Shown: positions 1 to 64,000 of the stretch, piece after piece
Layout of the letters: the number at the start of each line of letters is the position of its first letter
How positions within the stretch are numbered: the stretch's first letter is position 1
DNA from: Haplodiscus bocki
Taxonomy: Eukaryota
Direction of reading: 5' to 3'
Assembly: GCA_965655095.1 (NCBI GenBank)
Contig: OZ296649.1
Location: 108,066,001-108,130,000, forward strand
DNA length: 64,000 nucleotides
Notes under the pieces: model-generated
Databases searched by the model: none
What the model was told of the DNA's origin: nothing
The model's input: the letters and a program-made list of their open reading frames with translations, nothing else
Translations under genes and position numbers: made by a program

Positions 1-3000
1 TTACAGAGAAGCACGTTCATCAAACGAGATGAGACGAATCTTTTAGCGGTTTTTGCAACTTCGCTTTGGACTAGCGGCATATTGCTGTATTATTTTGGGA
101 AGGAAAAGGACGAACCAAAGACTTTCACCTCCGCAGAATGTCATTCACTGAGACATTGATGGGAAATTTCAAAGCTGTGTTTACGAAGGAAGAATACTTT
201 GAATATGGAAACAAATCAATATATTTAGCGGTTTTAGAAAATGACTCACCATCAAGAAGCTATCTCCAAAACTGAAATGAGAAAACAAAGCAGCCGATTA
301 CTCCTGCAAAATTGTAAACCGTGAATTTGGGACCATGCTATATTAAATCAAAATTGTAGTGGTGGGAAACAATATGTTCGAAAATCAAGAGAATTAGTAT
401 TCACAATCTGCTTTGCGTTCCGGAACCTTTCGGAATTGGATGCGAGGAACAAGATAAAGAAAAGTTCAATGGAATCTTATTCTCAGTGTATAATTTTCCA
501 TCGGGACCTTTTTGAGACAACTCAAACTTGTAGGTAGGGAGAGACACGTTCAAAAGTCGAGATAAATAAAATTTCATTGGAACGTTTGAAAATTTGTCCT
601 ACTGGGAGTTTGCTTCAAGAGATTTCGAGAAAATTTCCAACCGAAGACTTCGATATGCGTTGAAGGTTGTCGATTGAGACCTTTATAGAAGAACTGAAAC
701 CTGCTTAACGAAATAAAACTTTTTTCGAAATGGAAACGGATCTGTATTAGTACTGTTTTTTGGAATTATCTCACTATCAGGATTCTGCCTCAAAAAAGGA
801 AGTGCGGAAAAAATCGATTTGAATACTGCTGCAGAAAAGTAAAAAATGCATACTAGATTGCGCTGTTTAAGAATGATATATTAGAGATAGAGAAAAATGA
901 GATCGAACACCCAGATGAGTTATTATTCACAGTCTCCTCTGACTTCTGGAACTTTTAGGAATTTGATGCAAGGATAAAAATGAATAAATTTTATGTCCAA
1001 CCTTACAATATGCAGGTAGTTTTTTCAATTGGGTGAATGGCGAAACAAACAAACAATGTTATTACAGAGAACACGTTCGATAATCAACATAAATCAAAAG
1101 TTTTTCGCAATTTCGGATTAGAGCGACCGTGCTGGATTATGTTCAAAAAATGTTTTTTCAAAAAACGTTTTGGACGAGTTAACTTTTATTGACTGAGAAC
1201 ATGATGAAAAAAAATGCAGCCGCTTTCCTTTTTTACGAAGAAGAAAGAGTTTGAACATGCAGACAAAACTTCAGATACTGTTTTCAGGAAAACTCTCATT
1301 ATCAGTTATCCGTCCAAAGAACCGTTAACAGAAAAATCTCAATGAGTTTTGCTGCAGAATTTCAAATTTTTCGACCCAGACAAACCAAGCTGAAAACAAG
1401 CCTGCAGTTATGGGGAAATTTGAATTCGAACAACGATATAAGTCAAAACGCGCAATCTTCTTTGACGTCTGGATCGTTTCGGATTTTAAGGAAAGGGACA
1501 ACATAATTGACAGACCAATCGGATCCTACACTTAGTGCAAATGTTTTGATGAGGACCGTGATGAAACCAAGCAACCCGGTCTTTACAGAGAAGCACGTTC
1601 AATAAACGAGATGAGACAAATCCATTGGCGGTTTTTGCAATTTCGGACTACCGGCATTTTGGTGTATTATATTAGGAATTAATAAAAAAGAGGACGAATC
1701 AAAAACTTTAATCTCTGCAGAATGTCACTGACTGAGACATTGCTGGAAAAATCCAAAGCTGTGTTTACGAGGGAAGAAAATTTTGAAAATCGAAAGAAAT
1801 CAATGTATTTAGCGATTTTAGAAAAGGACTCACCATCAAGAATCTATCTCAAAAACTCAAATGAGAAAACAATGCAATTGATTACTCCTGCAAAATTGTA
1901 AACCGTGAAACTGAGACCTTGTTGTATTAATTCAAAGTTGTAGTGGTGGGAAGCAATATGTTCGATAATCAGGAAAAGTCAGTTTTTACAGTCTACTTTG
2001 CGTTCTGGAAGCTTTCTTATCTGGATGCGAGGAACAGGAATGAAGAAATTTCAATGGAATCCTATTCTTGGTGTAAATTTTTCCATTTGGACCTTTTTGA
2101 GACAACTCAACCCTGTAGGTAGGGAAAGACACGTCCGATAGTCAAGATAAAGGAACTTCCATGGCAACATTTGAAAGTTCGTCCTACGAGAAGTTGGCTG
2201 CAAGAAATTTTCAGACAACTTTCAACCGAAGTCCTTTATATGCAATGAAGGTTGTCGATTGAGACCTTGATGGAAAAAATCAAAACTGTCTGCACAAAAA
2301 AAGACTGTAAAAATGGAAACGGTTCTATGTCGATAGCGCGTTTTGGAAAATTCTCCTTATCAAGATTCTGTCTCAAAAATTGAAATGAATAAAAAATCCA
2401 ATTGAATACTACTGCAAATAGTAAAAATTACAAATGAGAACATATTGTTTCAAAATCAGTTTCTGGTTGTGGAAAAAAAAGAAATCGAATATCAAGATAA
2501 GTCAGCATTTACAGTCTCCTTTAGCTTCCAATTTTTTTGGTTTTCGTTGCGGGTAAACAAAATAAACTTTCAAGTTCAATCCTAACTTTATTCAGTAACT
2601 TTTTTCGATCGCACCTTCGTGAAACAAACCAACCAAGTAGTTACGGAGAAACACCTTCAATGGTGGACATGAAGCAAAATGAATAGCAATTTCTGCGGTT
2701 TTGGTCTACTGCGACCATGCAGGAAGGCTTTCAATAAAAGTTTTTGAACAAAATTTCTTGCACGAGTCAAAAGTTTTTGATTGAAACATTGATGAAGGAA
2801 ATCATTCCGTTAGTTACGAAGAAAAAAGAGTTTGAAGGTGGAGACCAACGTATCCAAACAGTGCATTTTGGAAATGTTTCTTTCTCAGAACTCTGTAGAA
2901 ACACCGCCAACGGAAATTGTCTAAAATATTTTTCCGGCCAAATTTCATTTTCATGAAACAGGACCAAGTTTGCCGAAAACAGCCCTGTAGCAATGGGGAA

Positions 3001-4730
3001 ATATGAGGACGAACACCGATATAAGTCAAATTTCACAACCTTCTTTGAAATGTGGAACTTTTCGGATTTTGATTCAAGGGAGAATACAATTGAAACATCA
3101 ATTGGATCCCACTCCTAGTGTAAATGCTTCGGTTCGGACCTCAATTAAACAAATCAACCCGGTGGTTACAGAGAAGCACGTCCAATAATCGAAAAAACAC
3201 GCATCTTTCAGAGGTTTTCGCAATTTCGGACTACCGGGACCATGCTGTATGACATTTAGAAAAAAAAAGACGAATCAGAGAATTTTACCTCCACGGAAAA
3301 TCGTCGACTGAGACCCTGAGGGAAGAATTCAAAGCTGTTTTTGCGAAGGAAGAAGAAGCTGAATATGGCAACAAATCAATTTATTTAGCGGTTCTAGAAA
3401 ATGACTCACCATCAAGAATCCATCTCAAAAACTGAAATGAGAAAACAATGCAATTGATTACTCCTGCAAATGTGTAAACCGTGAAATTGAGACCATGCTG
3501 TATTAAATCAAATTTGTATTGATGGGAAACAATATGTTTGAAAATCAAGAGAAGTCATTATTCACAATCTGCTTTGCGTTCTGGAACCTTTCGGAGTTGG
3601 ATGCCAGGAACAAGATAAAGAAAATTTCAATGGAATCGTTTTCTCAGTGTAACTTTTTCCACTGGAACTTTTTTGAAACAACTCATCCCTGTAGTTAGAG
3701 AGAAACACGTTCAATAGTCGATTTGTAGGAAATTCCTCAACAACGTTTGAAAAATCGTCTACAGGAAGCTTGCTGCAAGAAATTTTGAGATAATTCACAA
3801 CCGATGTTTTTCGTCTGCGTTGAAGGTTGTCGATTGAGACCGTGATAGAAGAAGTCAAACTTGTCTTTACGACGTCGGAAGGGTTTGAAGATTGAAAAGA
3901 AACCAAGGTTACTAGCGTTTTTTGGAATTAACTCATTATCATAAATTGGTTTTACAATTGAGATTGAAAAACAATGCAATTGATTACCTTTGCAAAAGTG
4001 TAAGAAAACGCAAAAGGGATCATGCTGTTTGAATTCAAGTTTGTGGTGGTAGAAGAAAACGAGACCGAACACTAAGTAAGGGCAGATTTCACAGTCTACT
4101 TTACCTCCTGGAACTTTTCGGAATCGGATGCAAGGAACAAAGTGAAGAACTTTTTGTCCCGTCCTACTCTATTAATGTAAATTTTTTCGGTTGGGATTTT
4201 AACGAAACAAACCAACCAGTTAGATACAGGAAAACCCGTTCGATATTCAAGAAAAACCAAAAAGTATGGCAATTTATCCAATTCCAGATTACCGAGACTT
4301 TGCTGGAATGTACTCAAGAACCTTTGGAAAAAGTTTAGAACGGAATAATTATTATTGATTGGGAACTTGATGGAAGATTTGCGGCTTTTTTCCTTTTTTT
4401 TAAGAAGAAGAAAGACTTTGAACATGCTGACAAATCTTTTTTGATAGTGTTTCCGGGAAAACTTCTCATTTTCAGTTATCTGTCTAAAGAACCCCTGACG
4501 GAAAAACTCTCAATGAGTCTTACTAAGAAAAATCAAAGTTTTTGACCGAGACCAACCTGGCTGAAAACAAGCCTGTAGTTATGGGGAAGTATGAGGTCGA
4601 ACAATGATATAAGTCAAACTTCGCAATCTCCTTTGACATCTGGAACTTTGATGCAAGTGGAAAAATATTTGAAACACCAATCGGATCCCTCTCTTAGTGT
4701 ATTTGGTTCGATTTGCACAAGCTGAAAGTT
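1..4730 (+). repeat. Diverged 3-monomer HOR domain (~1.58 kb period) with traces of a ~3.16 kb 6-mer period
   Basis: TTACAGAGAAGCACGT recurs at 1, ~1583 and ~3166. The monomers at ~1190 and ~4357 share diagnostic sequence (GAACATGC(A/T)GACAAA, CAGTTATC, AAAGAACC) at an offset of ~3167. Confidence 0.75.
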
Positions 4731-7700
4731 TTTGATTAAGACTTTGATGGAAAAAGTGCTGCCAGTAGTTACAAAGAAGAAAGAAGGGGAAGATGGAGAC
4801 AAATTTTTTCTAAGAGTGCATTTTCGAAAAGTTTCATTATCAGAACTCTGTCTAAAAAACCACTAACAGAAAAAGTCTGACAGATTATTCCTGCAAAATT
4901 TCAATTTTATTGACCGAGGCCAATTTGCCTGAAAACAAGCCTGTAGTTATGGGAAAGTATGAGGTCAAACAAAGATCTAAGTAAATTTCACAACCTTTTT
5001 TGACATCTGGAAATTTTCGGAATTTGATGCAAGTGAAAAACTAAATCAAACATCAATCGGATCCTTCTCTTAGTGTAAGCGTTTCGATTAGGACCGTGAT
5101 GAAACAAATCAACTCGGTGATTACAGAGAAGCATGTTCAATAAACGAGATAAAACTAATCTTTTAGCGGTGTTTGCGTTTTCGCACCACCGGCACATTGC
5201 TGTATTTTATTTAGAAAAAAAGGACGAATCAAAGACTTGATTCTCTTCTGAATGTCATTGACTGAGACATTGATGGATAAATTCAAAGGTGTGTTTACGA
5301 ACAAAGAGTAATTTGAAGATGGAAACAAATCAATGTGTTTACCGGTTTTAGAAAAGGACTCACCATCGGGAATCTATCTCAAAAACTGAAATGACAAAGC
5401 AATGCAAATGATTACTCCTGCAAAAGTGTAAACCGTGAAATTGAGACCATGCTGTATTAAATCAAACTTGTAGTGGTGGGAAACAATATGTTCGAAAATC
5501 AAGAGAAGTCATTTTTCACAATCTGCTTTGCGTTCTGGAACGTTTCGGATTTGGATGCGAGGAACAAGATAAAGAAAATTTCAATGGAATTTTTTTCTCA
5601 GTGTAATTTTTTCCATCGGGACTTTTTTGAGACAACTGAAACCTGTAGGTAGGGATAGACACGTTCAATAGTCGAGATAAAGGAATTTCCATAGCAACGT
5701 TTGAAAGTTCCTCTTACCGGTAGTTTGCTGCATTAAATTCTCAGACAACTTTCAACCTAAGTCTTTTGTTTGCAAAGAAGGTAGTCAATTGAGACCTTGA
5801 TGGAAAAAGTCAACTCTCTCTTCACGAAAAAGAAAGAGTGTAAAAAAAGGAAACGAATCTATGTTAGTAGCGCGTTTTGGAAAATTTTTACTATCAGTGT
5901 TCTGTCTCAAAAATTGAATTATTGAATTGAAGAAAAAATCCAATTGAATACTACTGCAAAAAGTAAAAACTGCAAATGAGACCATTTTGTTTGATATTCA
6001 GGTTCTGGTGGTAGAAAAAAAAAGAAATCGATCATCAGGATAAGTCAGCATTTACAGTCTCCTTTAGCTTCCAATTTTTTTTGGGTTATCGATGCGGGAG
6101 AACAAAATGAAAAAATTTCAAGTCCATTCCTAACTTTATTCAGTAACTTTTTTCGATCGCACCTTGATGAAACAAACCAACCAAGTAGTTACGGAGAAAT
6201 ACCTTCAATGGTGGACATGAAACAAAATGAATAGCAATTTCTGCATTTTCGGCCTACCGTGACCTGCTGGAAGGCGTTCAGGAAAAGTTTTTGAACAAAA
6301 AGTTTTGCACAAGTTGAAGGCTTTTGATTGAGACTTTGATGGAATAGGTGCTGTCGGTAGTTACAGAGAAAAAAGAGTGGGAAGATAAAGACAAATTTTT
6401 CCTAATATTGCTTTTTCGAAATGTTTCGTTATCAGAACTCTGTTAAAATAACCGCTAACGGAAAATGTCTAAGAGATTCTTCCTGCAAAATTTCAATTTT
6501 ATTGACCGAGACCAACCTGCCTGAAAACAAGCCTGTAATTATGGGAAAATAAGAGGTCGAACAAAGATATAGGTAAAATTTCACAACCTTCTTTGACATC
6601 TGGAAATTTTCGGACTTTGATGCAAGTGAAAAACTAAATGAAACATCAATCGGATCCTTCTCTTAGTGTAAGCGTTTCGATTAGGACCGTGATGAAACAA
6701 ATCAGCTCGGTGGTTACAGAGAAGCATGTTCAATAAACGAGATAAATTTAATCTTTTAGCGGTGTTTGCGTTTTCGCACCACCGGCACCTTGCTGTATTT
6801 TATTTAGAAAAAAGAGGACGAATCAAAGACTTGATTCTCTTCAGAATGTCATTGACTGAGACATTGATGGAAAAATTCAAAGGTGTGTTTACGAAGGAAG
6901 AATAATTTGAAGATGGAAACAAATCAATGTATTTAGCGGTTTTAGAAAAGGACTCACCATCAGGAATCTATCTCAAAAACTGAAATGACAAAACAATGCA
7001 AATGATTACTCCTGCAAAAGTGTAAACCGTGAAATTGAGACCATGCTGTATTAAATCAAACTTGTAGTGGTGGGAAACAATATGTTCGAAAATCAAGAGA
7101 AGTCATTTTTCACAATCTGCTTTGCGTTCTGGAACGTTTCGGATTTGGATGCGAGGAACAAGATAAAGAAAATTTCAATGGAATTTTTTTCTCAGTGTAA
7201 TTTTTTCCATCGGGACTTTTTTGAGACAACTCAAACTTGTAGGTGGGGATAGACACGTTCAATAGTCGAGATAAAGGAATTTCCATAGCAACGTTTGAAA
7301 GTTCCTCTTACCGGGAGTTTGCTGCATTAAATTCTCAGACAACTTTCAACCTAAATCTTTTGTTTGCAAAGAAGGTAGTCGATTGAGACTTTGATGGAAA
7401 AAGTCAACTCTCTCTTCACGAAAAAGAAAGAGTGTAAAAAAAGGAAACGAATCTATGTTAGTAGCGCGTTTTGGAAATTTTTTACTATCAGTGTTCTGTC
7501 TCAAAAATTGAATTATTGAATTGAAGAAAAAATCCAATTGGATACTACTGCAAAAAGTAAAAACTGCAAATGAGACCATATTGTTTGATATTCAGGTTCT
7601 GGTGGTAGAAAAAAAAGAAATCGATCATCAGGATAAGTCAGCATTTACAGTCTCCTTTAGCTTCCAATTTTTTTTGGGTTTTCGATGCGGGAGAACAAAA

Positions 7701-10535
7701 TGAAAAAATTTCAAGTCCATTCCTAACTTTATTCAGTAACTTTTTTCGATCGCACCTTGATGAAACAAACCAACCAAGTAGTTACGGAGAAATACCTTCA
7801 ATGGTGGACATGAAACAAAATGAATAGCAATTTCTGCATTTTCGGCCTACCGTGACCTGCTGGAAGGCGTTCAGGAAAAGTTTTTGAACAAAAAGTTTTG
7901 CACAAGTTGAAGGCTTTTGATTGAGACTTTGATGGAATAGGTGCTGTCGGTAGTTACAGAGAAGAAAGAGTGGGAAGATAAAGACAAATTTTTCCTAATA
8001 TTGCTTTTTCGAAATGTTTCGTTATCAGAACTCTGTTAAAATAACCGCTAACGGAAAATGTCTAAGAGATTCTTCCTGCAAAATTTCAATTTTATTGACC
8101 GAGACCAACCTGCCTGAAAACAAGCCTGTAATTATGGGAAAATAAGAGGTCGAACAAAGATATAGGTAAAATTTCACAACCTTCTTTGACATCTGGAAAT
8201 TTTCGGACTTTGATGCAAGTGAAAAACTAAATGAAACATCAATCGGATCCTTCTCTTAGTGTAAGCGTTTCGATTAGGACCGTGATGAAACAAATCAGCT
8301 CGGTGGTTACAGAGAAGCATGTTCAATAAACGAGATAAAACTAATATTTTAGCGGTGTTTGCGTTTTCGCACCACCGGCACCTTGCTGTATTTTATTTAG
8401 AAAAAAGAGGACGAGTCAAAGACTTGATTCTCTTCAGAATGTCATTGACTGAGACCTTGATGGAAAAATTCAAAGGTGTGTTTACGAAGGAAGAATAATT
8501 TGAAGATGGAAACAAATCAATGTATTCAGCGGTTTTAGAAAAGGACTCACCATCAGGAATCTATCTCAAAAACTGAAATGACAAAACAATGCGAATGATT
8601 ACTCCTGCAAAAGTGTAAACCGTGAAATTGAGACCATGCTGTATTAAATCAAACTTGTAGTGGTGGGAAACAATATGTTCGAAAATCAAGAGAAGTCATT
8701 TTTCACAATCTGCTTTGCGTTCTGGAACGTTTCGGATTTGGATGCGAGGAACAAGATAAAGAAAATTTCAATGGAATTTTTTTCTCAGTGTAAATTTTTC
8801 CATCGGGACTTTTTTGAGACAACTCAAACCTGTAGGTAGGGATAGACACGTTCAATAGTCGAGATAAAGGAATTTCCATAGCAACGTTTGAAAGTTCCTC
8901 TTACCGGGAATTTGCTGCAATAAATTCTCAGACAACTTTCAACCTAAATCTTTTGTTTGCAAAGAAGGTAGTCGATTGAGACTTTGATGGAAAAAGTCAA
9001 CTCTCTCTTCACGAAAAAGAAAGAGTGTAAAAAAAGGAAACGAATCTATGTTAGTAGCGCGTTTTGGAAATTTTTTACTATCAGTGTTCTGTCTCAAAAA
9101 TTGAATTATTGAATTGAAGAAAAAATCCAATTGGATACTACTGCAAAAAGTAAAAACTGCAAATGAGACCATATTGTTTGATATTCAGGTTCTGGTGGTA
9201 GAAAAAAAAGAAATCGATCATCAGGATAAGTCAGCATTTACAGTCTCCTTTAGCTTCCAATTTTTTTTGGGTTATCGATGCGGGAGAACAAAATGAAAAA
9301 ATTTCAAGTCCATTCCTAACTTTATTCAGTAACTTTTTTCGATCGCACCTTGATGAAACAAACCAACCAAGTAGTTACGGAGAAATACCTTCAATGGTGG
9401 ACATGAAACAAAATGAATAGCAATTTCTGCATTTTCGTCCTACCGTGACTCTGCTGGAAGGCGTTCAGGAAAAGTTTTTGAACAAAAAGTTTTGCACAAG
9501 TTGAAGGCTTTTGATTGAGACTTTGATGGAATAGGTGCTGTCGGTAGTTACAGAGAAGAAAGAGTGGGAAGATAAAGACAAATTTTTCCTAATATTGCTT
9601 TTTCGAAATGTTTCGTTATCAGAACTCTGTTAAAATAACCGCTAACGGAAAATGTCTGAGAGATTCTTCCTGCAAAATTTCAATTTTATTGACCGAGACC
9701 AATTTGCCTGAAAACAAGCCTGTAATTAAGGGAAAATAAGAGGTCGAACAAAGATATAGGTCAAATTTCACAACCTTCTTTGACATCTCGAACTTTTCGC
9801 ACTTTGACGCAAGTGAAAAACTAAATGAAACATCAATCGGATCCTTCTCTTAGTGTAAGCGTTTCGATTAGGACCGTGATGAAACAAATCAACCCGGTGG
9901 TTACAGAGAAGCATGCTCGATAAACGAGATGAAACTAATCTTTTAGCGGTGTTTGCGTTTTCGCACCACCGGCGCGTTGCTGTATTTTAATTAGAAAAAC
10001 GAGGACAAATCAAAGACTTGATCCTCTTCAGAATGTCATTGACTGAGACATTGATGGAAAAATTCAAAGCTGGGTTTACGAAGGAAGAATAATTTGAAGA
10101 TGGAAACAAATCAATGTTTTTAGTGGTTTTAGAAAAGGACTCACCATCAGGAATCTATCTCAAAAACTGAAATGAGAAAACAATGCAATTGATTACTCCT
10201 GCAAATGTGTAAACCGTGAAATTGAGACCATGCTGTATTAAAACAAAATTGTGACGGTGGGAAACAATGTGTTCGAAAATCAAGAGAAGTCAGTATTCAC
10301 AATCGGCTTTGCGTTCCGGAACCTTTCGGAGTTGGATGCGAGGAACAAGATAAAGAAAGTTTCAATGGAATTTTTTTCTCGGTGTAAATTTTTCCATCGG
10401 GACTTTTTTGAGACAACTCAAACCTGTAGGTAAGGATAGACACGTTCAATAGTCGAGACGAAAGATTTTCCATAGCAACTTTCGAAAGATCCTCTTACCG
10501 GGAATTTGCTGCAATAAATTTTCAGACAACTTTCT
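4730..10535 (+). repeat. Homogeneous 3-monomer HOR, 1593-1594 bp period, about 3.6 copies
   Basis: Near-identical ORF translations recur with ends at 5985, 7579 and 9172, and starts at 7521 and 9114. The copies share a diagnostic duplication, AAATTGAATTATTGAATTGAAG. Confidence 0.93.
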
Positions 10536-51600: not shown

Positions 51601-54600
51601 AGTTAAAGAGAATGACGTTCGATGATCAAGAGAAATCACAATTTGTAGAGATTTTTGACTTTTCGGGCTACAAGGACCTTGCTGTAAGGTATTCAGAAAA
51701 AGTTCCTCATAAAAAACCCTTTTCACGTGTTGAAGAGTATTGATTGAGTCTTTGACGGAAGCGTTCGAGCCTCTAACTACGATGAAGAAAGGGTTTGAAT
51801 GTGGAGACAAAACTGTTTTAGAAGTGCTTTTGAAAGCTTTCGGAAAGTCAGTTTTCTGTCCACAGAAGCAAAATGACAAAACGTCTAATTGATACTTCCT
51901 CCATGGGTTTAGAGTTTTCGATTGAGATCAAATTGGTTGAAGTCAAGTCTGCAGTTAGAGAGAAGGTGGAGATCGAACACCAAGATGAGTCAAAAATCAC
52001 ATTTGCCCATGGCCATTGGAACTTTTCGGATTTTGATGCAGGGATAAAAATTAATGGTTTGAGAAACCCATCCAATTTTATCGGTTCAATTTTTTTGATT
52101 GGGATCTTGAAGAAGTAAAACAAGCCGGTTGTTGTGGAGAAACAAATTGAATAAAAAAATCAATCAAATTTTGTGATGACTTTTGCAATTTTGGGCTAAC
52201 GGGAGTTTGCTGGAAGATATCTAGACAACAAGTTTTCTCGGATGCGCCCAAACAAACTGAAGGCTGTTGATTCAGTCTTTGTTGAACGAATTCAAGGCTG
52301 TACTTACGAAGTAACAAAATTTTCAAAACAGATACAAATCACTGTTATTGGCATTTTTGGAAATATATTCTTATCAAGATTCTTTTTCAAAAATTGAAAT
52401 GAAGAAAAAATCCATCGAATACTATTGCAACAGCTTTAGTTTTGCAAATCCGACTGTCCTGCTTGGAATTAAAATTGTTGTGGTAAATAAAAAAAATCGA
52501 ACATCAAGTGAAGTCAGTGTCCACAGTCTATTTCGACTTCTGAATTTTTCCTGGTTTTGATGCAAAAAATGAGCAAAATGAATTTATTGTTCAACCTCAT
52601 TCTTTTTTTTTCGTCAAAAAGTAAAAGAAACAAACCAACTAGTTGTTTATGGAGAAAAACATTACATGATCAAGATAAAACAATTTTTATAGCATTTTTC
52701 AATTTTTCGAACTACTGGTACATTGGAGGAACGCATTTAGACATTCTTTTTTCGAACACCCCAAAACAAATTAAAGATTGTTCATTAAGACTATGTTGAA
52801 AGAATTGCAGCCCATATTTGCGAATTGAGAAGAGTTTGAATAAGGAAACAAATCAATGTTAATACCGCCTTCTGGATAATTTTCACTAACAACATTCTGT
52901 CCCAAGGTTCAAAATGATGAGAAAATACAAATGACCACAACTGTAAAAACGTAACTTTTGTAATTGAAGCCATGCGGTTGGAAAACAAACTTGTAGTGGA
53001 AAAGAAATGAGATCGAACATCAAGATATTTCAGTATTCACATTCCTTTCAACTTGTGGAGTTTTTCGGATTTTGACGCAAGCAACAAAATAAGAAATTGC
53101 AAGTCTAATCTCACCCTTTTGTTGTGACTTTGTTTTCAGATGGACGTTGAATACACAAAAAGACCAGTTAAGTACAGAGAAAAACGTTCGACGATCGACA
53201 AAAACCAAACTTTGGGGAGATTTTGGCCTTTTGGGGCTACCAGGACCTTGCTGTAAGGTTTTCAGAAAAAGTTTCTCATGAAAATCCCTCTTTACGTGTT
53301 GAATAATACTGATTGAGATTTTGACGGAAGCGTTGCAGCCGGTTATTACGATGAAGAAAGAGTTTGAATGTGGAGAGAAAAGTGTCTTAGAAGAGCTTTT
53401 GAGAACCTTCTTTAAATCAGTTTTCTGTCCACAGAATCAAAATGAAAAAATGTCGAAATGATACTTCCTCCATAGGTTTGAAGTTTCCGTTTGAGATCAA
53501 AATGGTTGAAGTCAAGTTTTCAGTTAGAGAGAAGGAGGAGATCGAACACCAAGATGAGTCAAAAATCACATTTGCCCATGGCCATTGGAACTTTTCGGAT
53601 TTTGATGCAGGGATAAAAATTAATGGTTTGAGAAACCCATCCAATTTTATCGGTTCAATTTTTTTGATTGGGATCTTGAAGAAGTAAAACAAGCCGGTTG
53701 TTATGGAGAAACAAATTGAATAAAAAAATCAATCAAATTTTGTGATGACTTTTGCAATTTTGGGCTAACGGGAGTTTGCTGGAAGATATCTAGACAACAA
53801 GTTTTCTCGGATGCGCCAAAACAAACTGAAGGCTGTTGATTCAGTCTTTGTTGAACGAATTCAAGGCTGTACTTACGAAGTAACAAAATTTTCAAAACAG
53901 ATACAAATCACTGTTATTGGAATTTTTGGAATTATATTCTTATCAAGATTCTTTTTCAAAAATTGAAATGAAGAAAAAATCCATCGAATACTATTGCAAC
54001 AGCTTTAGTTTTGCAAATCCGACTGTCCTGCTTGGAATTAAAATTGTTGTGGTAAATAAAAAAAATCGAACATCAAGTGAAGTCAGTGTCCACAGTCTAT
54101 TTCGACTTCTGAATTTTTCCTGGTTTTGATGCAAAAAATGAGCAAAATGAATTTATTGTTCAACCCCATTCTTTATTTTGTTTCGTCAAAAAGTAAAAAA
54201 ACAAACCAACTAGTTGTTTATGGAGAAAAACATTACATGATCAAGATAAAACAATTTTTATAGCATTTTTCAATTTTTCGAACTACTGGTACATTGGAGG
54301 AACTCATTTAGACATTCTTTTTTCGAACACCCCAAAACAAATTAAAGATTGTTCATTAAGACTATGCTGAAAGAATTGCAGCCCATATTTGCGAATTGAG
54401 AAGAGTTTGAATAAGGAAACAAATCAATGTTAATACCGCCTTCTGGATAATTTTCACTAACAACATTCTGTCCCAAGGTTCAAAATGATGAGAAAATACA
54501 AATGACCACAACTGGAAAAACGTAACTTTTGTAATTGAAGCCATGCGGTTGGAAAACAAACTTGTAGTGGAAAAGAAATGAGATCGAACATCAAGATATT

Positions 54601-55875
54601 TCAGTATTCACATTCCTTTCAACTTGTGGAGTTTTTCGGATTTTGACGCAAGCAACAAAATAAGAAATTGCAAGTCTAATCTCACCCTTTTGTTGTGACT
54701 TTGTTTTCAGATGGACGTTGAATACACAAAAAGACCAGTTAAGTACGGAGAAAAACGTTCGACAATCGACAAAAACCAAACTTTGTGGAGATTTTGGCCT
54801 TTTCGGGCTACCAGGACCTTGCTGTAAGGTATTCGAAAAACGTTTCTCATGAAAAACCCTCTTTACGTGTTGAATAATACTGATTGAGTCTTTGACGGAA
54901 GCGTTGCGGCCTGTTATTACGATGAAGAAAGAGATTGAATGTGGAGAGAAAAGTGTTTTAGAAGAGCTTTTGAGAACATTCTTAAAATCAGTTTTCTGTC
55001 CACAGAATCAAAATGAAAAAATGTCGAAATGATACTTCCTCCATAGATTTAAACTTTTCGATTGAGATCAAAATGGTTGAAGCCAAATTTGCAGTTAGAG
55101 CGCAGGAGGAGATCGAATGCCAAGAAGAATCAAAAGTCACATTCTCCTTTGGCCTTTGGAACTTTTCGGATTTTGATGCAGGAATTAAAATTTTTGATTT
55201 GAGAGACCCATCCATTTCTAATGGTCTAAATTTTTCGATTGGGACCTCGTTAGTGTAAAACAAGCCGGTTGTTACGGAGAAACACGTGAGTAAAAGAAAT
55301 CGATCAAAAACTGTGATAACTTTTGCAATTTTGGACTAACGGAACCTTGCTGGAAAGTATTTAGACAACAGACTTTCTCGGATACGCCCAAACGATTTAA
55401 AAGCTGTTGATTGAATCTTTTGTTGAACGAATTCACGGCTGTATTTACCAAGTATGAAAAGTTTCAAAAAAGATACAAATCAATGTTATGGGGCTTTTTT
55501 GGAAAAATCTCGCTATCAAAACCTCTTTTCAAAAATCCAAAGGAAGAAAAAGTCCATTGAAAACAATCACAGCAGCATGAATATTGCAAATGAGATCATG
55601 CTGTATGAAAATAAACTTGTTTGGTAAAAACAGATCGAACATCAAAATAAGTCAGTACTCACAGTCTGTTTTGACTTTTGAATTTTTATGATTTTGATGC
55701 AGAGAATGAACAAAATGAAATTATTGTCAAATCCCATTCTTTAAATGTTTTTGTTAAAATCTCAAGAAAACAACCAAATAGGTATTTACGGAGAAAAACG
55801 TTCCATCACCAAGTTAAAACAATTTTTGTAGCGTTTGTTTTGTAAATTTGAGCTACTGGGACCTTGGAGGAACGC
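48600..55875 (+). repeat. Mosaic zone of interleaved E-C-D and F-G-H trimers (~1570 bp)
   Basis: D-type ORFs at 49643, 52791 and 54362 alternate with G/H monomers (GAATTCACGGCTGTATTTACCAAG at ~50710 and ~55429; GAGACTTTGAGGGATAG at ~51217 and ~55927). A and B monomers are absent. Confidence 0.88.
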
Positions 55876-58800
55876 ATTTAGACAATTTTTTTCGAACACT
55901 CCAAAACGAGTTGAAGGTTGTTGTTTGAGACTTTGAGGGATAGATTGCAGCCGGTATTTGCGAAGTGAGAACAGTTTGAATCAGGAGACAAATCAAAGTT
56001 AATACTGCTTGTTGGAAAAATCCCATTAACAGCGTTTTGGCTCAAGATTCGAAAAGATGAGAAAAACCAATTGACTCCAACTGGAAAGTTTTAACCTATG
56101 TAATTGAGGCCATGCGGTTTAAAATTAAACTTGTTGTGAAAAAAACGAGATCGAACATCAAGATATTTCAGAATTGACAATCTTTTTAATTTGTGGAAGT
56201 TTTCGGACTTTGGCACAAGCAACAAAATGATAAAATTGCAAGTCCAATCTCACCCGTTTCTTGTGATTTTGTTTTCAGATGGACGCTGCAGAAACAAAAA
56301 AACCAGTTAGTTAAAGAGACTGACGTTCGATGATCGAGATCAGTCAAAATTTTTGGAAATTTTTGCCTTTTCGGGCTACAAGAACATTGGTGTAAAGTAT
56401 GCAGAAAAAGTTCCTCATAAATAACCCTTTTTACGTGTTGAATAGTATTGATTGTGTCTTTGACGGAAGCGTTGCAGCCTGTAATTACGATGAAGAAAGA
56501 GTTTGAATGTGGAGACAAAACTGTTTTAGATGTCTTTCTGAAACCTTCTAAAAATCAGTTTTCTGTCCACAGAAGCAAAATGAAAAAATGTCGAAATGAT
56601 ACTTCCTCCATAGATTTAAACTTTTCGATTGAGATCAAAATGGTTGAAGCCAAGTCTGCAGTTGGAGAGAAGGAGGTGATCGAACGCCAAGAAGAGTCAA
56701 AAATCACATTCTCCTTTGGCCTTTGGAACTTTTTGGATTTTGATGCTGGAAGTAAAAATTTTGATTTGAGAAACCCATCCATTTCTATTGGTCTAATTTG
56801 TTGGATTGGGACCTCGATAGAGTAAAACAAGCCGGTGGTTACGGAGAAACACGTGAGTAAAAGAAATTGATCAAAAATTGTGATAACTTTTGCAATTTTG
56901 GACTAACAGAACCTTGCTGGAAAAGTATTTAGACAACAGACTTTCTCGGATACGCACAAACGATTTAAAAGCTGTTGATTGAGTCTTTTGTTGAACGAAT
57001 TCACGGCTGTATTTACCAAGTAAGAAAAGTTTCAAAAAAGATACAAATCAATGTTATGGGTCTTTTTTGGAAAAATCTCGCTATCAAGACCTCTTTTCAA
57101 AAATCCAAAGGAAGGAAAAATCCATTGAAAACAATCACAGAAGCATGAATATTGCAAGTGAGACCATGCTGTTTGAAAATAAACTTGTTTGGTAAAAACA
57201 GATCGAACATCAAAATAAGTCAGTACTCACAGTCTATTTTGACTCCTGAATTTTTTCTGATTTTGTTGCAGAGAATGAACAAAATGAAAGTTTTGTCCGA
57301 TCCCATTCTATAAATGTTTTTGTTAAAATCTCAAGAAAACAACCAACTAGGTATTTACGGAGAAAAACGTTCCATCACCAAGTTAAAATCAATTTTTGTA
57401 GCGTTTGTTTTGTAAATTCGAACTATTGGGACCTTGGAGGAAGGCATTTAGACAATTTTTTTCGAACACTCCAAAACGAGTTGAAGGTTGTTGTTTGAGA
57501 CTTTGAGGGATAGATTGCAGCCGGTATTTGCGAAGTGAGAACAGTTTGAATCAGGAGACAAATCAAAGTTAATACTGCTTGTTGGAAAAATCCCATTAAC
57601 AGCGTTTTGGCTCAAGATTCGAAAAGATGAGAAAAACCAATTGACTCCAACTGGAAAGTTTTAACCTATGTAATTGAGGCCATGCGGTTTAAAATTAAAC
57701 TTGTTGTGAAAAAAACGAGATCGAACATCAAGATATTTCAGAATTGACAATCTTTTTAATTTGTGGAAGTTTTCGGACTTTGGCACAAGCAACAAAATGA
57801 TAAAATTGCAAGTCCAATCTCACCCGTTTCTTGTGATTTTGTTTTCAGATGGACGCTGCAGAAACAAAAAAACCAGTTAGTTAAAGAGACTGACGTTCGA
57901 TGATCGAGATCAGTCAAAATTTTTGGAAATTTTTGCCTTTTCGGGCTACAAGAACATTGGTGTAAAGTATGCAGAAAAAGTTCCTCATAAATAACCCTTT
58001 TTACGTGTTGAATAGTATTGATTGTGTCTTTGACGGAAGCGTTGCAGCCTGTAATTACGATGAAGAAAGAGTTTGAATGTGGAGACAAAACTGTTTTAGA
58101 TGTCTTTCTGAAACCTTCTAAAAATCAGTTTTCTGTCCACAGAAGCAAAATGAAAAAATGTCGAAATGATACTTCCTCCATAGATTTAAACTTTTCGATT
58201 GAGATCAAAATGGTTGAAGCCAAGTCTGCAGTTGGAGAGAAGGAGGTGATCGAACGCCAAGAAGAGTCAAAAATCACATTCTCCTTTGGCCTTTGGAACT
58301 TTTTGGATTTTGATGCTGGAAGTAAAAATTTTGATTTGAGAAACCCATCCATTTCTATTGGTCTAATTTGTTGGATTGGGACCTCGATAGAGTAAAACAA
58401 GCCGGTGGTTACGGAGAAACACGTGAGTAAAAGAAATTGATCAAAAATTGTGATAACTTTTGCAATTTTGGACTAACAGAACCTTGCTGGAAAAGTATTT
58501 AGACAACAGACTTTCTCGGATACGCACAAACGATTTAAAAGCTGTTGATTGAGTCTTTTGTTGAACGAATTCACGGCTGTATTTACCAAGTAAGAAAAGT
58601 TTCAAAAAAGATACAAATCAATGTTATGGGTCTTTTTTGGAAAAATCTCGCTATCAAGACCTCTTTTCAAAAATCCAAAGGAAGGAAAAATCCATTGAAA
58701 ACAATCACAGAAGCATGAATATTGCAAGTGAGACCATGCTGTTTGAAAATAAACTTGTTTGGTAAAAACAGATCGAACATCAAAATAAGTCAGTACTCAC

Positions 58801-61800
58801 AGTCTATTTTGACTCCTGAATTTTTTCTGATTTTGTTGCAGAGAATGAACAAAATGAAAGTTTTGTCCGATCCCATTCTATAAATGTTTTTGTTAAAATC
58901 TCAAGAAAACAACCAACTAGGTATTTACGGAGAAAAACGTTCCATCACCAAGTTAAAATCAATTTTTGTAGCGTTTGTTTTGTAAATTCGAACTATTGGG
59001 ACCTTGGAGGAAGGCATTTAGACAATTTTTTTCGAACACTCCAAAACGAGTTGAAGGTTGTTGTTTGAGACTTTGAGGGATAGATTGCAGCCGGTATTTG
59101 CGAAGTGAGAACAGTTTGAATCAGGAGACAAATCAAAGTTAATACTGCTTGTTGGAAAAATCCCATTAACAGCGTTTTGGCTCAAGATTCGAAAAGATGA
59201 GAAAAACCAATTGACTCCAACTGGAAAGTTTTAACCTATGTAATTGAGGCCATGCGGTTTAAAATTAAACTTGTTGTGAAAAAAACGAGATCGAACATCA
59301 AGATATTTCAGAATTGACAATCTTTTTAATTTGTGGAAGTTTTCGGACTTTGGCACAAGCAACAAAATGATAAAATTGCAAGTCCAATCTCACCCGTTTC
59401 TTGTGATTTTGTTTTCAGATGGACGCTGCAGAAACAAAAAAACCAGTTAGTTAAAGAGACTGACGTTCGATGATCGAGATCAGTCAAAATTTTTGGAAAT
59501 TTTTGCCTTTTCGGGCTACAAGAACATTGGTGTAAAGTATGCAGAAAAAGTTCCTCATAAATAACCCTTTTTACGTGTTGAATAGTATTGATTGTGTCTT
59601 TGACGGAAGCGTTGCAGCCTGTAATTACGATGAAGAAAGAGTTTGAATGTGGAGACAAAACTGTTTTAGATGTCTTTCTGAAACCTTCTAAAAATCAGTT
59701 TTCTGTCCACAGAAGCAAAATGAAAAAATGTCGAAATGATACTTCCTCCATAGATTTAAACTTTTCGATTGAGATCAAAATGGTTGAAGCCAAGTCTGCA
59801 GTTGGAGAGAAGGAGGTGATCGAACGCCAAGAAGAGTCAAAAATCACATTCTCCTTTGGCCTTTGGAACTTTTTGGATTTTGATGCTGGAAGTAAAAATT
59901 TTGATTTGAGAAACCCATCCATTTCTATTGGTCTAATTTGTTGGATTGGGACCTCGATAGAGTAAAACAAGCCGGTGGTTACGGAGAAACACGTGAGTAA
60001 AAGAAATTGATCAAAAATTGTGATAACTTTTGCAATTTTGGACTAACAGAACCTTGCTGGAAAAGTATTTAGACAACAGACTTTCTCGGATACGCACAAA
60101 CGATTTAAAAGCTGTTGATTGAGTCTTTTGTTGAACGAATTCACGGCTGTATTTACCAAGTAAGAAAAGTTTCAAAAAAGATACAAATCAATGTTATGGG
60201 TCTTTTTTGGAAAAATCTCGCTATCAAGACCTCTTTTCAAAAATCCAAAGGAAGGAAAAATCCATTGAAAACAATCACAGAAGCATGAATATTGCAAGTG
60301 AGACCATGCTGTTTGAAAATAAACTTGTTTGGTAAAAACAGATCGAACATCAAAATAAGTCAGTACTCACAGTCTATTTTGACTCCTGAATTTTTTCTGA
60401 TTTTGTTGCAGAGAATGAACAAAATGAAAGTTTTGTCCGATCCCATTCTATAAATGTTTTTGTTAAAATCTCAAGAAAACAACCAACTAGGTATTTACGG
60501 AGAAAAACGTTCCATCACCAAGTTAAAATCAATTTTTGTAGCGTTTGTTTTGTAAATTCGAACTATTGGGACCTTGGAGGAAGGCATTTAGACAATTTTT
60601 TTCGAACACTCCAAAACGAGTTGAAGGTTGTTGTTTGAGACTTTGAGGGATAGATTGCAGCCGGTATTTGCGAAGTGAGAACAGTTTGAATCAGGAGACA
60701 AATCAAAGTTAATACTGCTTGTTGGAAAAATCCCATTAACAGCGTTTTGGCTCAAGATTCGAAAAGATGAGAAAAACCAATTGACTCCAACTGGAAAGTT
60801 TTAACCTATGTAATTGAGGCCATGCGGTTTAAAATTAAACTTGTTGTGAAAAAAACGAGATCGAACATCAAGATATTTCAGAATTGACAATCTTTTTAAT
60901 TTGTGGAAGTTTTCGGACTTTGGCACAAGCAACAAAATGATAAAATTGCAAGTCCAATCTCACCCGTTTCTTGTGATTTTGTTTTCAGATGGACGCTGCA
61001 GAAACAAAAAAACCAGTTAGTTAAAGAGACTGACGTTCGATGATCGAGATCAGTCAAAATTTTTGGAAATTTTTGCCTTTTCGGGCTACAAGAACATTGG
61101 TGTAAAGTATGCAGAAAAAGTTCCTCATAAATAACCCTTTTTACGTGTTGAATAGTATTGATTGTGTCTTTGACGGAAGCGTTGCAGCCTGTAATTACGA
61201 TGAAGAAAGAGTTTGAATGTGGAGACAAAACTGTTTTAGATGTCTTTCTGAAACCTTCTAAAAATCAGTTTTCTGTCCACAGAAGCAAAATGAAAAAATG
61301 TCGAAATGGTACTTCCTCCATAGATTTAAACTTTTCGATTGAGATCAAAATGGTTGAAGCCAAGTCTGCAGTTGGAGAGAAGGAGGTGATCGAACGCCAA
61401 GAAGAGTCAAAAATCACATTCTCCTTTGGCCTTTGGAACTTTTTGGATTTTGATGCTGGAAGTAAAAATTTTGATTTGAGAAACCCATCCATTTCTATTG
61501 GTCTAATTTGTTGGATTGGGACCTCGATAGAGTAAAACAAGCCGGTGGTTACGGAGAAACACGTGAGTAAAAGAAATTGATCAAAAATTGTGATAACTTT
61601 TGCAATTTTGGACTAACAGAACCTTGCTGGAAAAGTATTTAGACAACAGACTTTCTCGGATACGCACAAACGATTTAAAAGCTGTTGATTGAGTCTTTTG
61701 TTGAACGAATTCACGGCTGTATTTACCAAGTAAGAAAAGTTTCAAAAAAGATACAAATCAATGTTATGGGTCTTTTTTGGAAAAATCTCGCTATCAAGAC

Positions 61801-64000
61801 CTCTTTTCAAAAATCCAAAGGAAGGAAAAATCCATTGAAAACAATCACAGAAGCATGAATATTGCAAGTGAGACCATGCTGTTTGAAAATAAACTTGTTT
61901 GGTAAAAACAGATCGAACATCAAAATAAGTCAGTACTCACAGTCTATTTTGACTCCTGAATTTTTTCTGATTTTGTTGCAGAGAATGAACAAAATGAAAG
62001 TTTTGTCCGATCCCATTCTATAAATGTTTTTGTTAAAATCTCAAGAAAACAACCAACTAGGTATTTACGGAGAAAAACGTTCCATCACCAAGTTAAAATC
62101 AATTTTTGTAGCGTTTGTTTTGTAAATTCGAACTATTGGGACCTTGGAGGAAGGCATTTAGACAATTTTTTTCGAACACTCCAAAACGAGTTGAAGGTTG
62201 TTGTTTGAGACTTTGAGGGATAGATTGCAGCCGGTATTTGCGAAGTGAGAACAGTTTGAATCAGGAGACAAATCAAAGTTAATACTGCTTGTTGGAAAAA
62301 TCCCATTAACAGCGTTTTGGCTCAAGATTCGAAAAGATGAGAAAAACCAATTGACTCCAACTGGAAAGTTTTAACCTATGTAATTGAGGCCATGCGGTTT
62401 AAAATTAAACTTGTTGTGAAAAAAACGAGATCGAACATCAAGATATTTCAGAATTGACAATCTTTTTAATTTGTGGAAGTTTTCGGACTTTGGCACAAGC
62501 AACAAAATGATAAAATTGCAAGTCCAATCTCACCCGTTTCTTGTGATTTTGTTTTCAGATGGACGCTGCAGAAACATAAAAACCAGTTAGTTAAAGAGAC
62601 TGACGTTCGATGATCGAGATCAGTCAAAATTTTTGGAAATTTTTGCCTTTTCGGGCTACAAGAACATTGGTGTAAAGTATGCAGAAAAAGTTCCTCATAA
62701 ATAACCCTTTTTACGTGTTGAATAGTATTGATTGTGTCTTTGACGGAAGCGTTGCAGCCTGTAATTACGATGAAGAAAGAGTTTGAATGTGGAGACAAAA
62801 CTGTTTTAGATGTCTTTCTGAAACCTTCTAAAAATCAGTTTTCTGTCCACAGAAGCAAAATGAAAAAATGTCGAAATGATACTTCCTCCATAGATTTAAA
62901 CTTTTCGATTGAGATCAAAATGGTTGAAGCCAAGTCTGCAGTTGGAGAGAAGGAGGTGATCGAACGCCAAGAAGAGTCAAAAATCACATTCTCCTTTGGC
63001 CTTTGGAACTTTTTGGATTTTGATGCTGGAAGTAAAAATTTTGATTTGAGAAACCCATCCATTTCTATTGGTCTAATTTGTTGGATTGGGACCTCGATAG
63101 AGTAAAACAAGCCGGTGGTTACGGAGAAACACGTGAGTAAAAGAAATTGATCAAAAATTGTGATAACTTTTGCAATTTTGGACTAACAGAACCTTGCTGG
63201 AAAAGTATTTAGACAACAGACTTTCTCGGATACGCACAAACGATTTAAAAGCTGTTGATTGAGTCTTTTGTTGAACGAATTCACGGCTGTATTTACCAAG
63301 TAAGAAAAGTTTCAAAAAAGATACAAATCAATGTTATGGGTCTTTTTTGGAAAAATCTCGCTATCAAGACCTCTTTTCAAAAATCCAAAGGAAGGAAAAA
63401 TCCATTGAAAACAATCACAGAAGCATGAATATTGCAAGTGAGACCATGCTGTTTGAAAATAAACTTGTTTGGTAAAAACAGATCGAACATCAAAATAAGT
63501 CAGTACTCACAGTCTATTTTGACTCCTGAATTTTTTCTGATTTTGTTGCAGAGAATGAACAAAATGAAAGTTTTGTCCGATCCCATTCTATAAATGTTTT
63601 TGTTAAAATCTCAAGAAAACAACCAACTAGGTATTTACGGAGAAAAACGTTCCATCACCAAGTTAAAATCAATTTTTGTAGCGTTTGTTTTGTAAATTCG
63701 AACTATTGGGACCTTGGAGGAAGGCATTTAGACAATTTTTTTCGAACACTCCAAAACGAGTTGAAGGTTGTTGTTTGAGATTTTGAGGGATAGATTGCAG
63801 CCGGTATTTGCGAAGTGAGAACAGTTTGAATCAGGAGACAAATCAAAGTTAATACTGCTTGTTGGAAAAATCCCATTAACAGCGTTTTGGCTCAAGATTC
63901 GAAAAGATGAGAAAAACCAATTGACTCCAACTGGAAAGTTTTAACCTATGTAATTGAGGCCATGCGGTTTAAAATTAAACTTGTTGTGAAAAAAACGAGA
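55875..64000 (+). repeat. Near-perfect 3-monomer HOR, exact 1570 bp period, more than 5 copies, running off the window
   Basis: ORFs at 56186, 57756, 59326, 60896 and 62466 step by exactly 1570. The only differences seen by eye are at 61309 (A>G), 62577 (A>T) and 63781 (C>T). Confidence 0.98.

What the first reader, a model, noticed from the sequence alone, without database searches (positions are those of the whole stretch)
1..64000. Candidate centromeric or pericentromeric satellite with a nested HOR hierarchy and age layering
Seen: periods of ~175, ~525, then 1570/1593 (9 subunits), 2625 (15) and ~4755 (~27 subunit lengths) occupy discrete domains. Diverged monomers (10.5-17 kb, 32.9-34.4 kb) separate homogeneous expansions, and the most homogeneous domain lies at the right edge. 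Known: layered expansion of HOR arrays flanked by older monomeric satellite is characteristic of human centromeres. Inference: the window may be the flank of an active centromeric array that continues to the right. I do not recognise this satellite family, so it may be undescribed.
Basis: partly seen in the sequence, partly recalled or inferred. Interest (0 to 1): 0.75.

Follow-up and report, generated by a model that had tools for sequence, protein, structure and literature searches.

The report
Layered 525-bp satellite in an acoel-like genome
The whole 64-kb window is non-coding tandem-repeat DNA with repeats nested inside repeats, much like human centromere DNA in layout, but nothing here shows that it is a centromere, and read depth suggests its youngest block is small.

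Summary
97% of the window is one head-to-tail satellite. Its robust unit is about 525 bp, and that unit is itself a cryptic trimer of about 175-bp monomers that are roughly 60% alike. Neighbouring 525-bp units are only 55-65% identical. On this old array lie small, discrete higher-order blocks:
- 1593 bp (3 units, about 6.6 copies)
- 4753 bp (9 units including an inverted 1.1-kb segment, about 2.4 copies)
- 2625 bp (5 units, about 5 copies)
- 1570 bp (3 units), ending in 4.9 copies that differ at 3 bases

Zones with no higher-order repeat (10.5-16.7 kb and 33.1-34.3 kb) separate the blocks. The 1593 and 1570 repeats are unrelated. One unit (44272-44785) is a clean chimera of two paralogous units. 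This is the footprint of the unequal crossover that turns the 5-unit repeat into the 3-unit one.

The centromere reading remains untested. K-mer depth, set against variants that occur once or twice in the window, suggests only about 7-15 copies of the youngest repeat genome-wide. There is no conserved box, no excess dyad symmetry, and every block is tiny. Earlier scan notes report similar arrays with nucleosome-length monomers on other pieces of this genome. I rate it a new member of a known kind and give the centromere reading about 0.25.

The parts
1..4712 (+). Old copies (about 3) of the 1593-bp HOR, each made of three 525-bp units (types A, B, C)
   Evidence: Units are 70-88% identical to their best partners, and offset-3 identity is 65-85%. 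There is a phase break at 4713-4717.
4713..10534 (+). Young copies (about 3.65) of the 1593-bp HOR
   Evidence: Self-BLAST of 4712-8940 against 6304-10534 gives 96.7% identity. Units are 94-99.8% identical at offset 3.
10537..16690 (+). Zone of diverged 525-bp units with no HOR
   Evidence: Identity is 56-66% at every unit offset and best partners reach only 67-81%. Units are still in register, with internal phase breaks at 13892 and 15475.
16691..21937 (+). Older relative of the 4753-bp unit, with a local 2854-bp duplication
   Evidence: 16660-20002 matches 22926-26272 and 27679-31029 at about 94.4%. Units 17225 and 20079 are 99.6% identical.
19088..19996 (-). Inverted satellite segment, first copy
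   Evidence: nhmmer hits lie on the minus strand. The junction joins + column 301 to - column 287. GC skew is negative in this bin.
21938..33112 (+). 4753-bp HOR, about 2.35 copies. Each copy holds about 9 unit lengths, including about 2.15 inverted units.
   Evidence: Self-BLAST of 21938-28355 against 26690-33112 gives 97.8% identity. Units are 98-100% identical at +4751 to +4757.
25363..26497 (-). Inverted segment inside 4753-bp HOR copy 1
   Evidence: Minus-strand nhmmer hits.
30114..31254 (-). Inverted segment inside 4753-bp HOR copy 2
   Evidence: Minus-strand nhmmer hits. Units 25659- and 30410- are 100% identical.
33122..34304 (+). Short zone of diverged units between HOR domains
   Evidence: Best partners are only 66-73% identical. 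There is a phase break at 33115/33122.
34305..44799 (+). 2625-bp HOR of five 525-bp units (P, R1, N, S, R2), four copies
   Evidence: Self-BLAST of 34362-42271 against 36987-44901 gives 94.5% identity. The cluster string is PRNSR repeated.
44272..44785 (+). Chimeric unit, R2-type in its 5' part and R1-type in its 3' part. The crossover point lies between 44502 and 44507.
   Evidence: Of 120 columns that tell R1 from R2, the first 67 read 60 R2 to 4 R1 and the last 53 read 47 R1 to 5 R2. The unit is followed directly by N, which skips P and R1.
44800..48996 (+). Transition zone: one 3-unit copy (N, S, R), then one more 5-unit copy (P, R1, N, S, R)
   Evidence: Cluster string. Periods of 1575, 2634 and 4203 occur in this interval.
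48997..56315 (+). Older 1570-bp HOR copies (N, S, R), organised as a 4.7-kb repeat of three 1570 units. Two islands of the young lineage lie at 50558-51589 and 55277-56298.
   Evidence: Offset-9 unit identity is 93-98% against 77-90% at offset 3. Identity to the young HOR is 77-88%, except 95-99% in the two islands.
56316..64000 (+). Youngest 1570-bp HOR, 4.9 copies, running off the right edge of the window
   Evidence: Only 3 differences across the copies (61309, 62577, 63781). Contigs of four runs from two samples match it at 100%.

Best explanation
This is an old, non-coding, AT-rich (65% A+T) satellite array at least 64 kb long. Earlier notes point to an acoel worm as the host, and the array lies deep inside a chromosome-sized piece. 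The ancestral repeat is a ~175-bp monomer that became fixed long ago as a ~525-bp trimer. The 525-bp units have since drifted to about 60% mutual identity while staying in register. The array turns over locally by unequal homologous exchange and segmental tandem duplication. Misaligned exchange between non-adjacent, paralogous units duplicates or deletes whole numbers of units. This has created small blocks with new, longer periods (3, 5 and 9 units, and 3x3 units) that start out identical and then age. An occasional fold-back or inversion event is captured and amplified along with the block. Shown here: the hierarchy, the domain map, the relative ages, the lack of coding or RNA-family signal, and one direct crossover footprint that converts the 5-unit period to the 3-unit period. 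Inferred: the array is packaged as constitutive heterochromatin. Whether it also carries the centromere is open.
For: The ~525-bp model covers 97% of the window with no foreign insertion. The trimer substructure is shown. Adjacent units are 55-65% identical while HOR-offset units are 77-100% identical. The cluster map reads ABC..., then singletons, then KLMN..., PRNSR and NSR. The R2/R1 chimera has its breakpoint at 44502-44507. Phase breaks coincide with domain borders at 4717, 10534, 19088, 21398-21953, 26497, 31254 and 33115. S and R units at 47-56 kb find their best partners 6-16 kb away in the 2625-bp domain at 93-98% identity, so the older 1570 copies descend from the 5-unit HOR. There are no Pfam hits for the longest ORFs. 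The longest stop-free stretch, 174 aa, is close to the 112-168 aa seen in shuffles. There are no Rfam families or tRNAs. Contigs of four runs from two samples reproduce the young HOR exactly.
Against: Only one crossover footprint was resolved cleanly. The other R units are mosaics that could reflect gene conversion or plain divergence. Replication-based mechanisms such as slippage, rolling-circle reinsertion or break-induced replication would give similar block patterns and are not excluded. The heterochromatin state is inferred, not measured. No sequence outside the window could be read, so the array's total size and the family's distribution are unknown.
Confidence: 0.85

Rival explanations
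1. This is (peri)centromeric satellite. The window would be the layered flank of the chromosome's functional centromere, with the active, CENH3-bound, homogeneous HOR core continuing to the right of the window.
For: The monomer is nucleosome-length and the sequence is AT-rich. HORs are nested, with older diverged units between younger blocks and the youngest block (99.95% identical) running off the right edge. There are no transposon insertions in 64 kb. By earlier notes, the window lies at least 107 Mb from one end of its piece and at least 20.9 Mb from the other. Earlier notes also report ~167-180-bp-monomer HOR satellites on other pieces, which could be chromosome-specific relatives. Those notes are unchecked. 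A loose end at 59408 in three runs shows at least one HOR variant that is absent from the window.
Against: K-mer depth of the young HOR is only about 7-15 times the per-copy depth of variants that the window holds once or twice, while the window already holds 4.9 copies. A large core of this exact HOR is therefore unlikely. The tool itself warns that contig depth is a poor copy-number measure. All HOR blocks have only 2-7 copies, against hundreds to thousands in known centromere cores (established knowledge of human alpha satellite). No invariant box was found: the best 12-column window has a mean consensus frequency of 0.84. There is no excess dyad symmetry, z 0.18. Earlier notes list many arrays of similar period, some only 2-13 kb long, at many loci.
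Confidence: 0.25
2. This is an assembly artefact. The domain structure, the inversions or the perfect right-edge copies would be products of mis-assembly of a simpler repeat.
For: Perfectly identical tandem copies and inverted junctions are classic sites of assembler error. No long read spanning the domains could be inspected, because the runs are held only as short contigs.
Against: The domains differ by 15-40% in sequence, so they cannot be collapsed or expanded versions of each other. The in-window variants at 51097 and at 50592/55311 are recovered as separate unitigs in independent runs, at depths roughly proportional to their copy number in the window. The young HOR block spans 7.7 kb, which a single HiFi read can typically cover (my knowledge of the platform).
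Confidence: 0.04
3. This is a decayed coding or transposon-derived tandem array. The 525-bp unit (exactly 175 codons) would be a fossil exon, a repeat-protein module or an internal repeat of a mobile element.
For: 525 is a multiple of 3. Earlier notes describe gene- and transposon-derived macrosatellites, and a 177-bp satellite with an open frame, elsewhere in this genome. Those notes are unchecked.
Against: Open frames are no longer than chance allows. The six longest ORFs have no Pfam match below E 0.03. Conservation is spread evenly along the unit, with no visible codon-like pattern. Unit length varies between 501 and 539 bp.
Confidence: 0.04

Closest known systems
Primate alpha satellite (171-bp monomers, chromosome-specific HORs, layered centromeres)
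   Same: The monomer is nucleosome-length and the sequence is AT-rich. HOR copies are far more alike than adjacent monomers. Young homogeneous blocks are bordered by older diverged units. Inversions occur inside arrays, and the period changes by unequal crossover between paralogous monomers.
   Different: There is an extra fixed tier: a 525-bp trimer whose units are only about 60% alike. HOR blocks have 2-7 copies rather than hundreds or thousands. No CENP-B-box-like conserved motif was found. No centromere-protein data exist. Sequence relatedness was not tested and is not expected in an acoel.
Non-centromeric satellites and macrosatellites with higher-order structure (for example human beta satellite and HSat families, Drosophila 1.688, Tribolium TCAST; named from my own knowledge)
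   Same: These are non-coding tandem arrays of tens of kb. They show local amplification, patchy homogenisation and HOR-like super-periods without any centromere function.
   Different: Four to five nested tiers (175, 525, 1570, 4710 bp, besides 2625 and 4753 bp) within a single 64-kb stretch is unusually rich. The family itself appears undescribed.
Other ~167-180-bp-monomer HOR satellites noted on other pieces of this genome (scan notes s1-381258, s1-354055, s1-354061)
   Same: They have the same monomer length class, very diverged monomers, kilobase HORs of 8-10 monomers and layered ages. Their follow-up reports likewise found no evidence of centromere function.
   Different: The HOR lengths differ (1.4 kb and 1.67 kb against 1.57 kb and others).

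Membership tests
Satellite DNA with higher-order repeats | Long head-to-tail tandem array of one repeat family | tested here: met
   About 122 in-register copies of a 515-column model cover 97% of the 64 kb.
Satellite DNA with higher-order repeats | Copies one HOR period apart are much more alike than adjacent monomers | tested here: met
   Adjacent 525-bp units are 55-65% identical. HOR-offset units are 77-100% identical.
Satellite DNA with higher-order repeats | Non-coding, and not a known RNA gene array | tested here: met
   No Pfam hits, no Rfam or tRNA matches, and ORF lengths at chance level.
Centromeric satellite | Occupied by the centromeric histone (CENH3/CENP-A) or located at the primary constriction | not testable with these tools
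   No ChIP, CUT&Tag or cytology data are available. No RNA or chromatin run was offered.
Centromeric satellite | A large homogeneous core array (hundreds of kb or more) of the youngest HOR | tested here: inconclusive
   The depth ratio to in-window single- and double-copy variants suggests about 7-15 copies. Contig depth is a rough measure, and the array may continue with other variants (loose end at 59408).
Centromeric satellite | One principal array of the family per chromosome | not testable with these tools
   The rest of the genome cannot be read. Earlier notes mention similar-period arrays on other pieces, but homology is unverified.
Alpha satellite (sequence family) | Sequence homology to the 171-bp alpha consensus, and a CENP-B box in a subset of monomers | not tested
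No strongly conserved box of any kind was seen in the unit profile.

The most novel reading that the evidence does not exclude
The 175/525-bp family would be the centromeric satellite of this acoel chromosome, one of a set of chromosome-specific HOR satellites built on an ancient nucleosome-length monomer. That would be an alpha-satellite-like centromere organisation arising independently in Xenacoelomorpha, and the first centromere DNA described for that clade.
Probability: 0.2. Interest if true: 0.6.

Novelty: new member of a known kind. Interest (0 to 1): 0.3.

Why it matters
If FISH or CENH3 mapping placed this family at the centromere, it would give the first sequence-level view of a xenacoelomorph centromere. 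It would also be an independent case of alpha-satellite-like layered HOR evolution, useful for testing how general that mode of centromere turnover is. Even without a centromere role, the window is a compact record of satellite dynamics. It holds four to five nested periods, two unrelated 3-unit HORs, an amplified inversion, and a base-resolved crossover that changes the HOR period. As it stands, this is ordinary satellite biology in a little-studied lineage.

Tried and rejected
- Tandem Repeats Finder found nothing useful, because every period exceeds its 500-bp limit or is too diverged.
- The iterated 175-bp nhmmer model found only two of every three monomers strongly, so I switched to a 525-bp model.
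- Pfam on the six longest ORFs gave nothing.
- Rfam and ARAGORN on the whole window gave nothing.
- The look-up of encoding contigs with the 125-aa ORF in the HOR had no record.
- An exact 23-mer scan of metagenome contigs was blank.
- The search of earlier findings by sequence was blank.
- Folding one 525-bp unit as DNA gave z 0.18, so there is no dyad or cruciform excess.
- No ~10-bp WW periodicity stood out, there is no CpG depletion (o/e 0.89), and there are no telomere repeats.
- I considered Convolutriloba macropyga as the source, since its GC is 35.5% (PMC13650328). I rejected it because the window lies at least 107 Mb into its piece, whereas that assembly's largest chromosome is 89 Mb.
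- Papers on acoel satellites, centromeres or a usable karyotype: none found.
Full report
**What is there.** The window has no N, is 35% G+C, and shows a steady positive GC and AT skew. The skew dips in three 2-kb bins near 18-20, 24-26 and 30-32 kb. Distances between repeated 14-mers show sharp, domain-restricted modes:
- 1593/1594 at 0-10.5 kb
- almost nothing at 12-17 kb
- 2854, 3420 and 4753 at 16-33 kb
- 2624-2626 at 34-46 kb
- 1561-1575, 4719 and 3148 at 44-56 kb
- exactly 1570 at 56-64 kb

Base autocorrelation adds weak but consistent peaks at about 175, 350 and 525 bp in nearly every domain. Tandem Repeats Finder misses all of this because of its 500-bp ceiling.

**The basal units.** A profile seeded from one 176-bp stretch and iterated with nhmmer finds 261 hits. 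Their spacings cluster at 173-177 bp and 348-356 bp, so two of every three monomers score strongly and the third only weakly. A 515-column profile of the ~525-bp unit covers 62,035 of 64,000 bases in about 122 in-register copies. No uncovered gap exceeds 38 bp, so there is no transposon or other foreign insertion. Unit spacing is 524.3 +/- 8.2 bp. The three thirds of the 525-bp consensus are 60-62% identical over 149-168 aligned columns, with z 9.5-12 against shuffles. The 175-bp monomer is therefore real, and the 525-bp trimer is the unit that the whole array shares. This agrees with scan note s1-359331.

**The hierarchy.** Adjacent 525-bp units are only 55-65% identical, and the background identity between any two units is about 60%. 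Clustering at 70% identity gives this unit map:
- (A B C) about 6.6 times at 0-10.5 kb
- ten singletons at 10.5-16.7 kb
- a K L M N O P pattern, with K on the minus strand, at 16.7-33.1 kb
- two singletons
- (P R N S R) at 34.3-44.8 kb
- a short transition zone
- (N S R) to the end of the window

The higher-order repeats (HORs) are thus 3, 9, 5 and 3 units of 525 bp. At 47-56 kb, units nine apart are 93-98% identical while units three apart are 77-90% identical. This is a further tier, a 4.7-kb repeat made of three 1570-bp units.

- The 1593-bp and 1570-bp repeats are not one HOR. Their units share at most 64-65% identity, which is essentially background, so they formed independently.
- Every block is small: about 3 old plus 3.65 young copies of the 1593-bp HOR, 2.35 copies of the 4753-bp HOR, about 5 copies of the 2625-bp HOR, about 4.7 older copies of the 1570-bp HOR, and 4.9 young copies.

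**Ages.** Best-partner identity per unit:

| Interval | Best-partner identity |
|---|---|
| 0-4.7 kb | 70-88% |
| 5.1-10.4 kb | 94-99.8% |
| 10.9-16.7 kb | 67-81% |
| 17.2-32.4 kb | 98-100% |
| 33.2-34.3 kb | 66-73% |
| 34.3-47 kb | 88-98% |
| 47-56 kb | 89-99% |
| 56.3-64 kb | 100% |

The last block has 3 differences in about 6.1 kb of comparisons. The layering is real but patchy. Two islands of the young lineage (50558-51589 and 55277-56298, 95-99% identical to the young HOR) sit among copies that are only 77-88% identical to it. The reason is that a 4.7-kb segment spanning the border between the two lineages was itself duplicated.

**Mechanism.** Phase breaks in the 525-bp register fall at the domain borders: 4717, 10534, 19088, 19996, 21398-21953, 25363, 26497, 30114, 31254 and 33115. 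The 5-unit HOR holds two R-type units, R1 and R2, which are 75% identical to each other. Unit 44272-44785 reads R2 at 60 of its first 67 diagnostic columns and R1 at 47 of its last 53. The switch lies between 44502 and 44507, and the unit is followed directly by N. This is the expected product of an unequal crossover between R2 and R1. Such an exchange deletes P plus one R-equivalent and turns a 2625-bp period into a 1570-1575-bp one. S and R units at 47-56 kb have their closest relatives (93-98%) in the 2625-bp domain, so the older 1570 copies descend from the 5-unit HOR. Three inverted segments (19088-19996, 25363-26497, 30114-31254) are copies of one event carried along by later duplications. 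At the left junction, + column 301 meets - column 287, which is nearly the same phase. This agrees in part with notes s1-359443 and s1-359513.

**Not coding, not RNA.**
- The longest stop-free stretch is 174 aa, against 112-168 aa in shuffles.
- The six longest ORFs have no Pfam match.
- There are no Rfam families or tRNAs.
- Conservation along the unit is even. The mean consensus frequency is 0.72 among 38 representatives that are under 85% identical, and the best 12-column window reaches 0.84. No box-like motif stands out.
- One unit folded as DNA is no more stable than shuffles, z 0.18.
- CpG o/e is 0.89, and there is no ~10-bp WW peak.

**Independent support and copy number.** Four runs of one study hold 89-98% of the sampled words of the young HOR. 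Three runs come from one sample and one from a second sample. Laid on 58001-64000, their contigs are short unitigs that match at 100%. The depth of these unitigs is about 238, 500 and 680 in X1, X2 and X3. Two variant unitigs can be traced to places inside the window:
- One equals window 51097-51176, which occurs once. Its depth is 24, 62 and 57 in the three runs.
- One carries a 1-base deletion shared by the copies at 50592 and 55311, so it occurs twice. Its depth is 145 in X2.

Per-copy depth is therefore about 20-24, 51-73 and 47-57 in X1, X2 and X3. That puts the young HOR at roughly 7-15 copies, against 4.9 in the window. The tool warns that contig depth is no copy number, and the calibrators could themselves be repeated outside the window. 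I treat this as weak evidence that no very large array of this exact HOR exists. A 73-base loose end behind 59408 in X1-X3 is satellite-like but absent from the window at up to 3 mismatches. Further variants therefore exist elsewhere, probably to the right. The loose ends in X4 begin or end with GATC, which is consistent with Hi-C ligation joints and not with genomic junctions (my inference).

**Context.** Earlier notes place the window at least 107.2 Mb from one end of its piece and at least 20.9 Mb from the other. They point to an acoel close to Symsagittifera roscoffensis. Others call the animal a coral. I did not verify either. The published S. roscoffensis paper gives 2n = 20, a genome of 910-940 Mb, and repeats making up more than 60% of the genome, mostly LTR elements. 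It has no satellite or centromere analysis (PMC9911081). Convolutriloba macropyga is excluded on chromosome size (PMC13650328). No paper on acoel satellites or centromeres was found. The scan has already found and followed up similar HOR satellites with nucleosome-length monomers on other pieces of this genome. In each case there was no evidence of centromere function.

**Verdict.** The interpretation cannot be settled here. The layout resembles a centromere flank, but no specific centromere feature was met, and the depth estimate argues mildly against a large active core of this HOR. The best-supported account is an old 525-bp satellite remodelled by local unequal exchange. I rate it a new member of a known kind, of modest interest.

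Noticed in passing
window 1-32000: Base autocorrelation shows an extra weak peak at lag 74-75 (0.296-0.301 against a median of 0.271) in the left three domains, and at lag 90 in 34-46 kb. This hints at a still older sub-repeat inside the 175-bp monomer.
   Followed up: no
window 59408: In the three runs of sample S1, a contig leaves the young HOR at 59408 and continues for 73 bases in satellite-like sequence that the window lacks at up to 3 mismatches. A related HOR variant therefore exists outside the window.
   Followed up: partly
window 58203-58442, 63149, 63899 (run X4): Most loose ends in run X4 begin or end with GATC, as expected of Hi-C ligation joints. They should not be read as genomic junctions. 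X4's unitig depths are also much more uneven (318-1291), which suggests HOR polymorphism in the second sample or Hi-C bias.
   Followed up: no
window 1-64000: There is not one transposon insertion in 64 kb, even in units that have diverged by 35-40%. If the host is S. roscoffensis, its genome is reported as more than 60% repeats (PMC9911081). Either insertions are purged by array turnover or the region is refractory to them.
   Followed up: no
window 1-64000: CpG observed/expected is 0.89, and GpC is 0.78. The satellite shows no CpG depletion, which argues against long-term heavy cytosine-methylation decay.
   Followed up: no
window 18796-19369: At the inversion junction, the plus-strand unit stops at model column 301 and the minus-strand unit begins at column 287. 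Both arms therefore break at nearly the same phase, like a fold-back. The same junction recurs at 25363 and 30114.
   Followed up: partly
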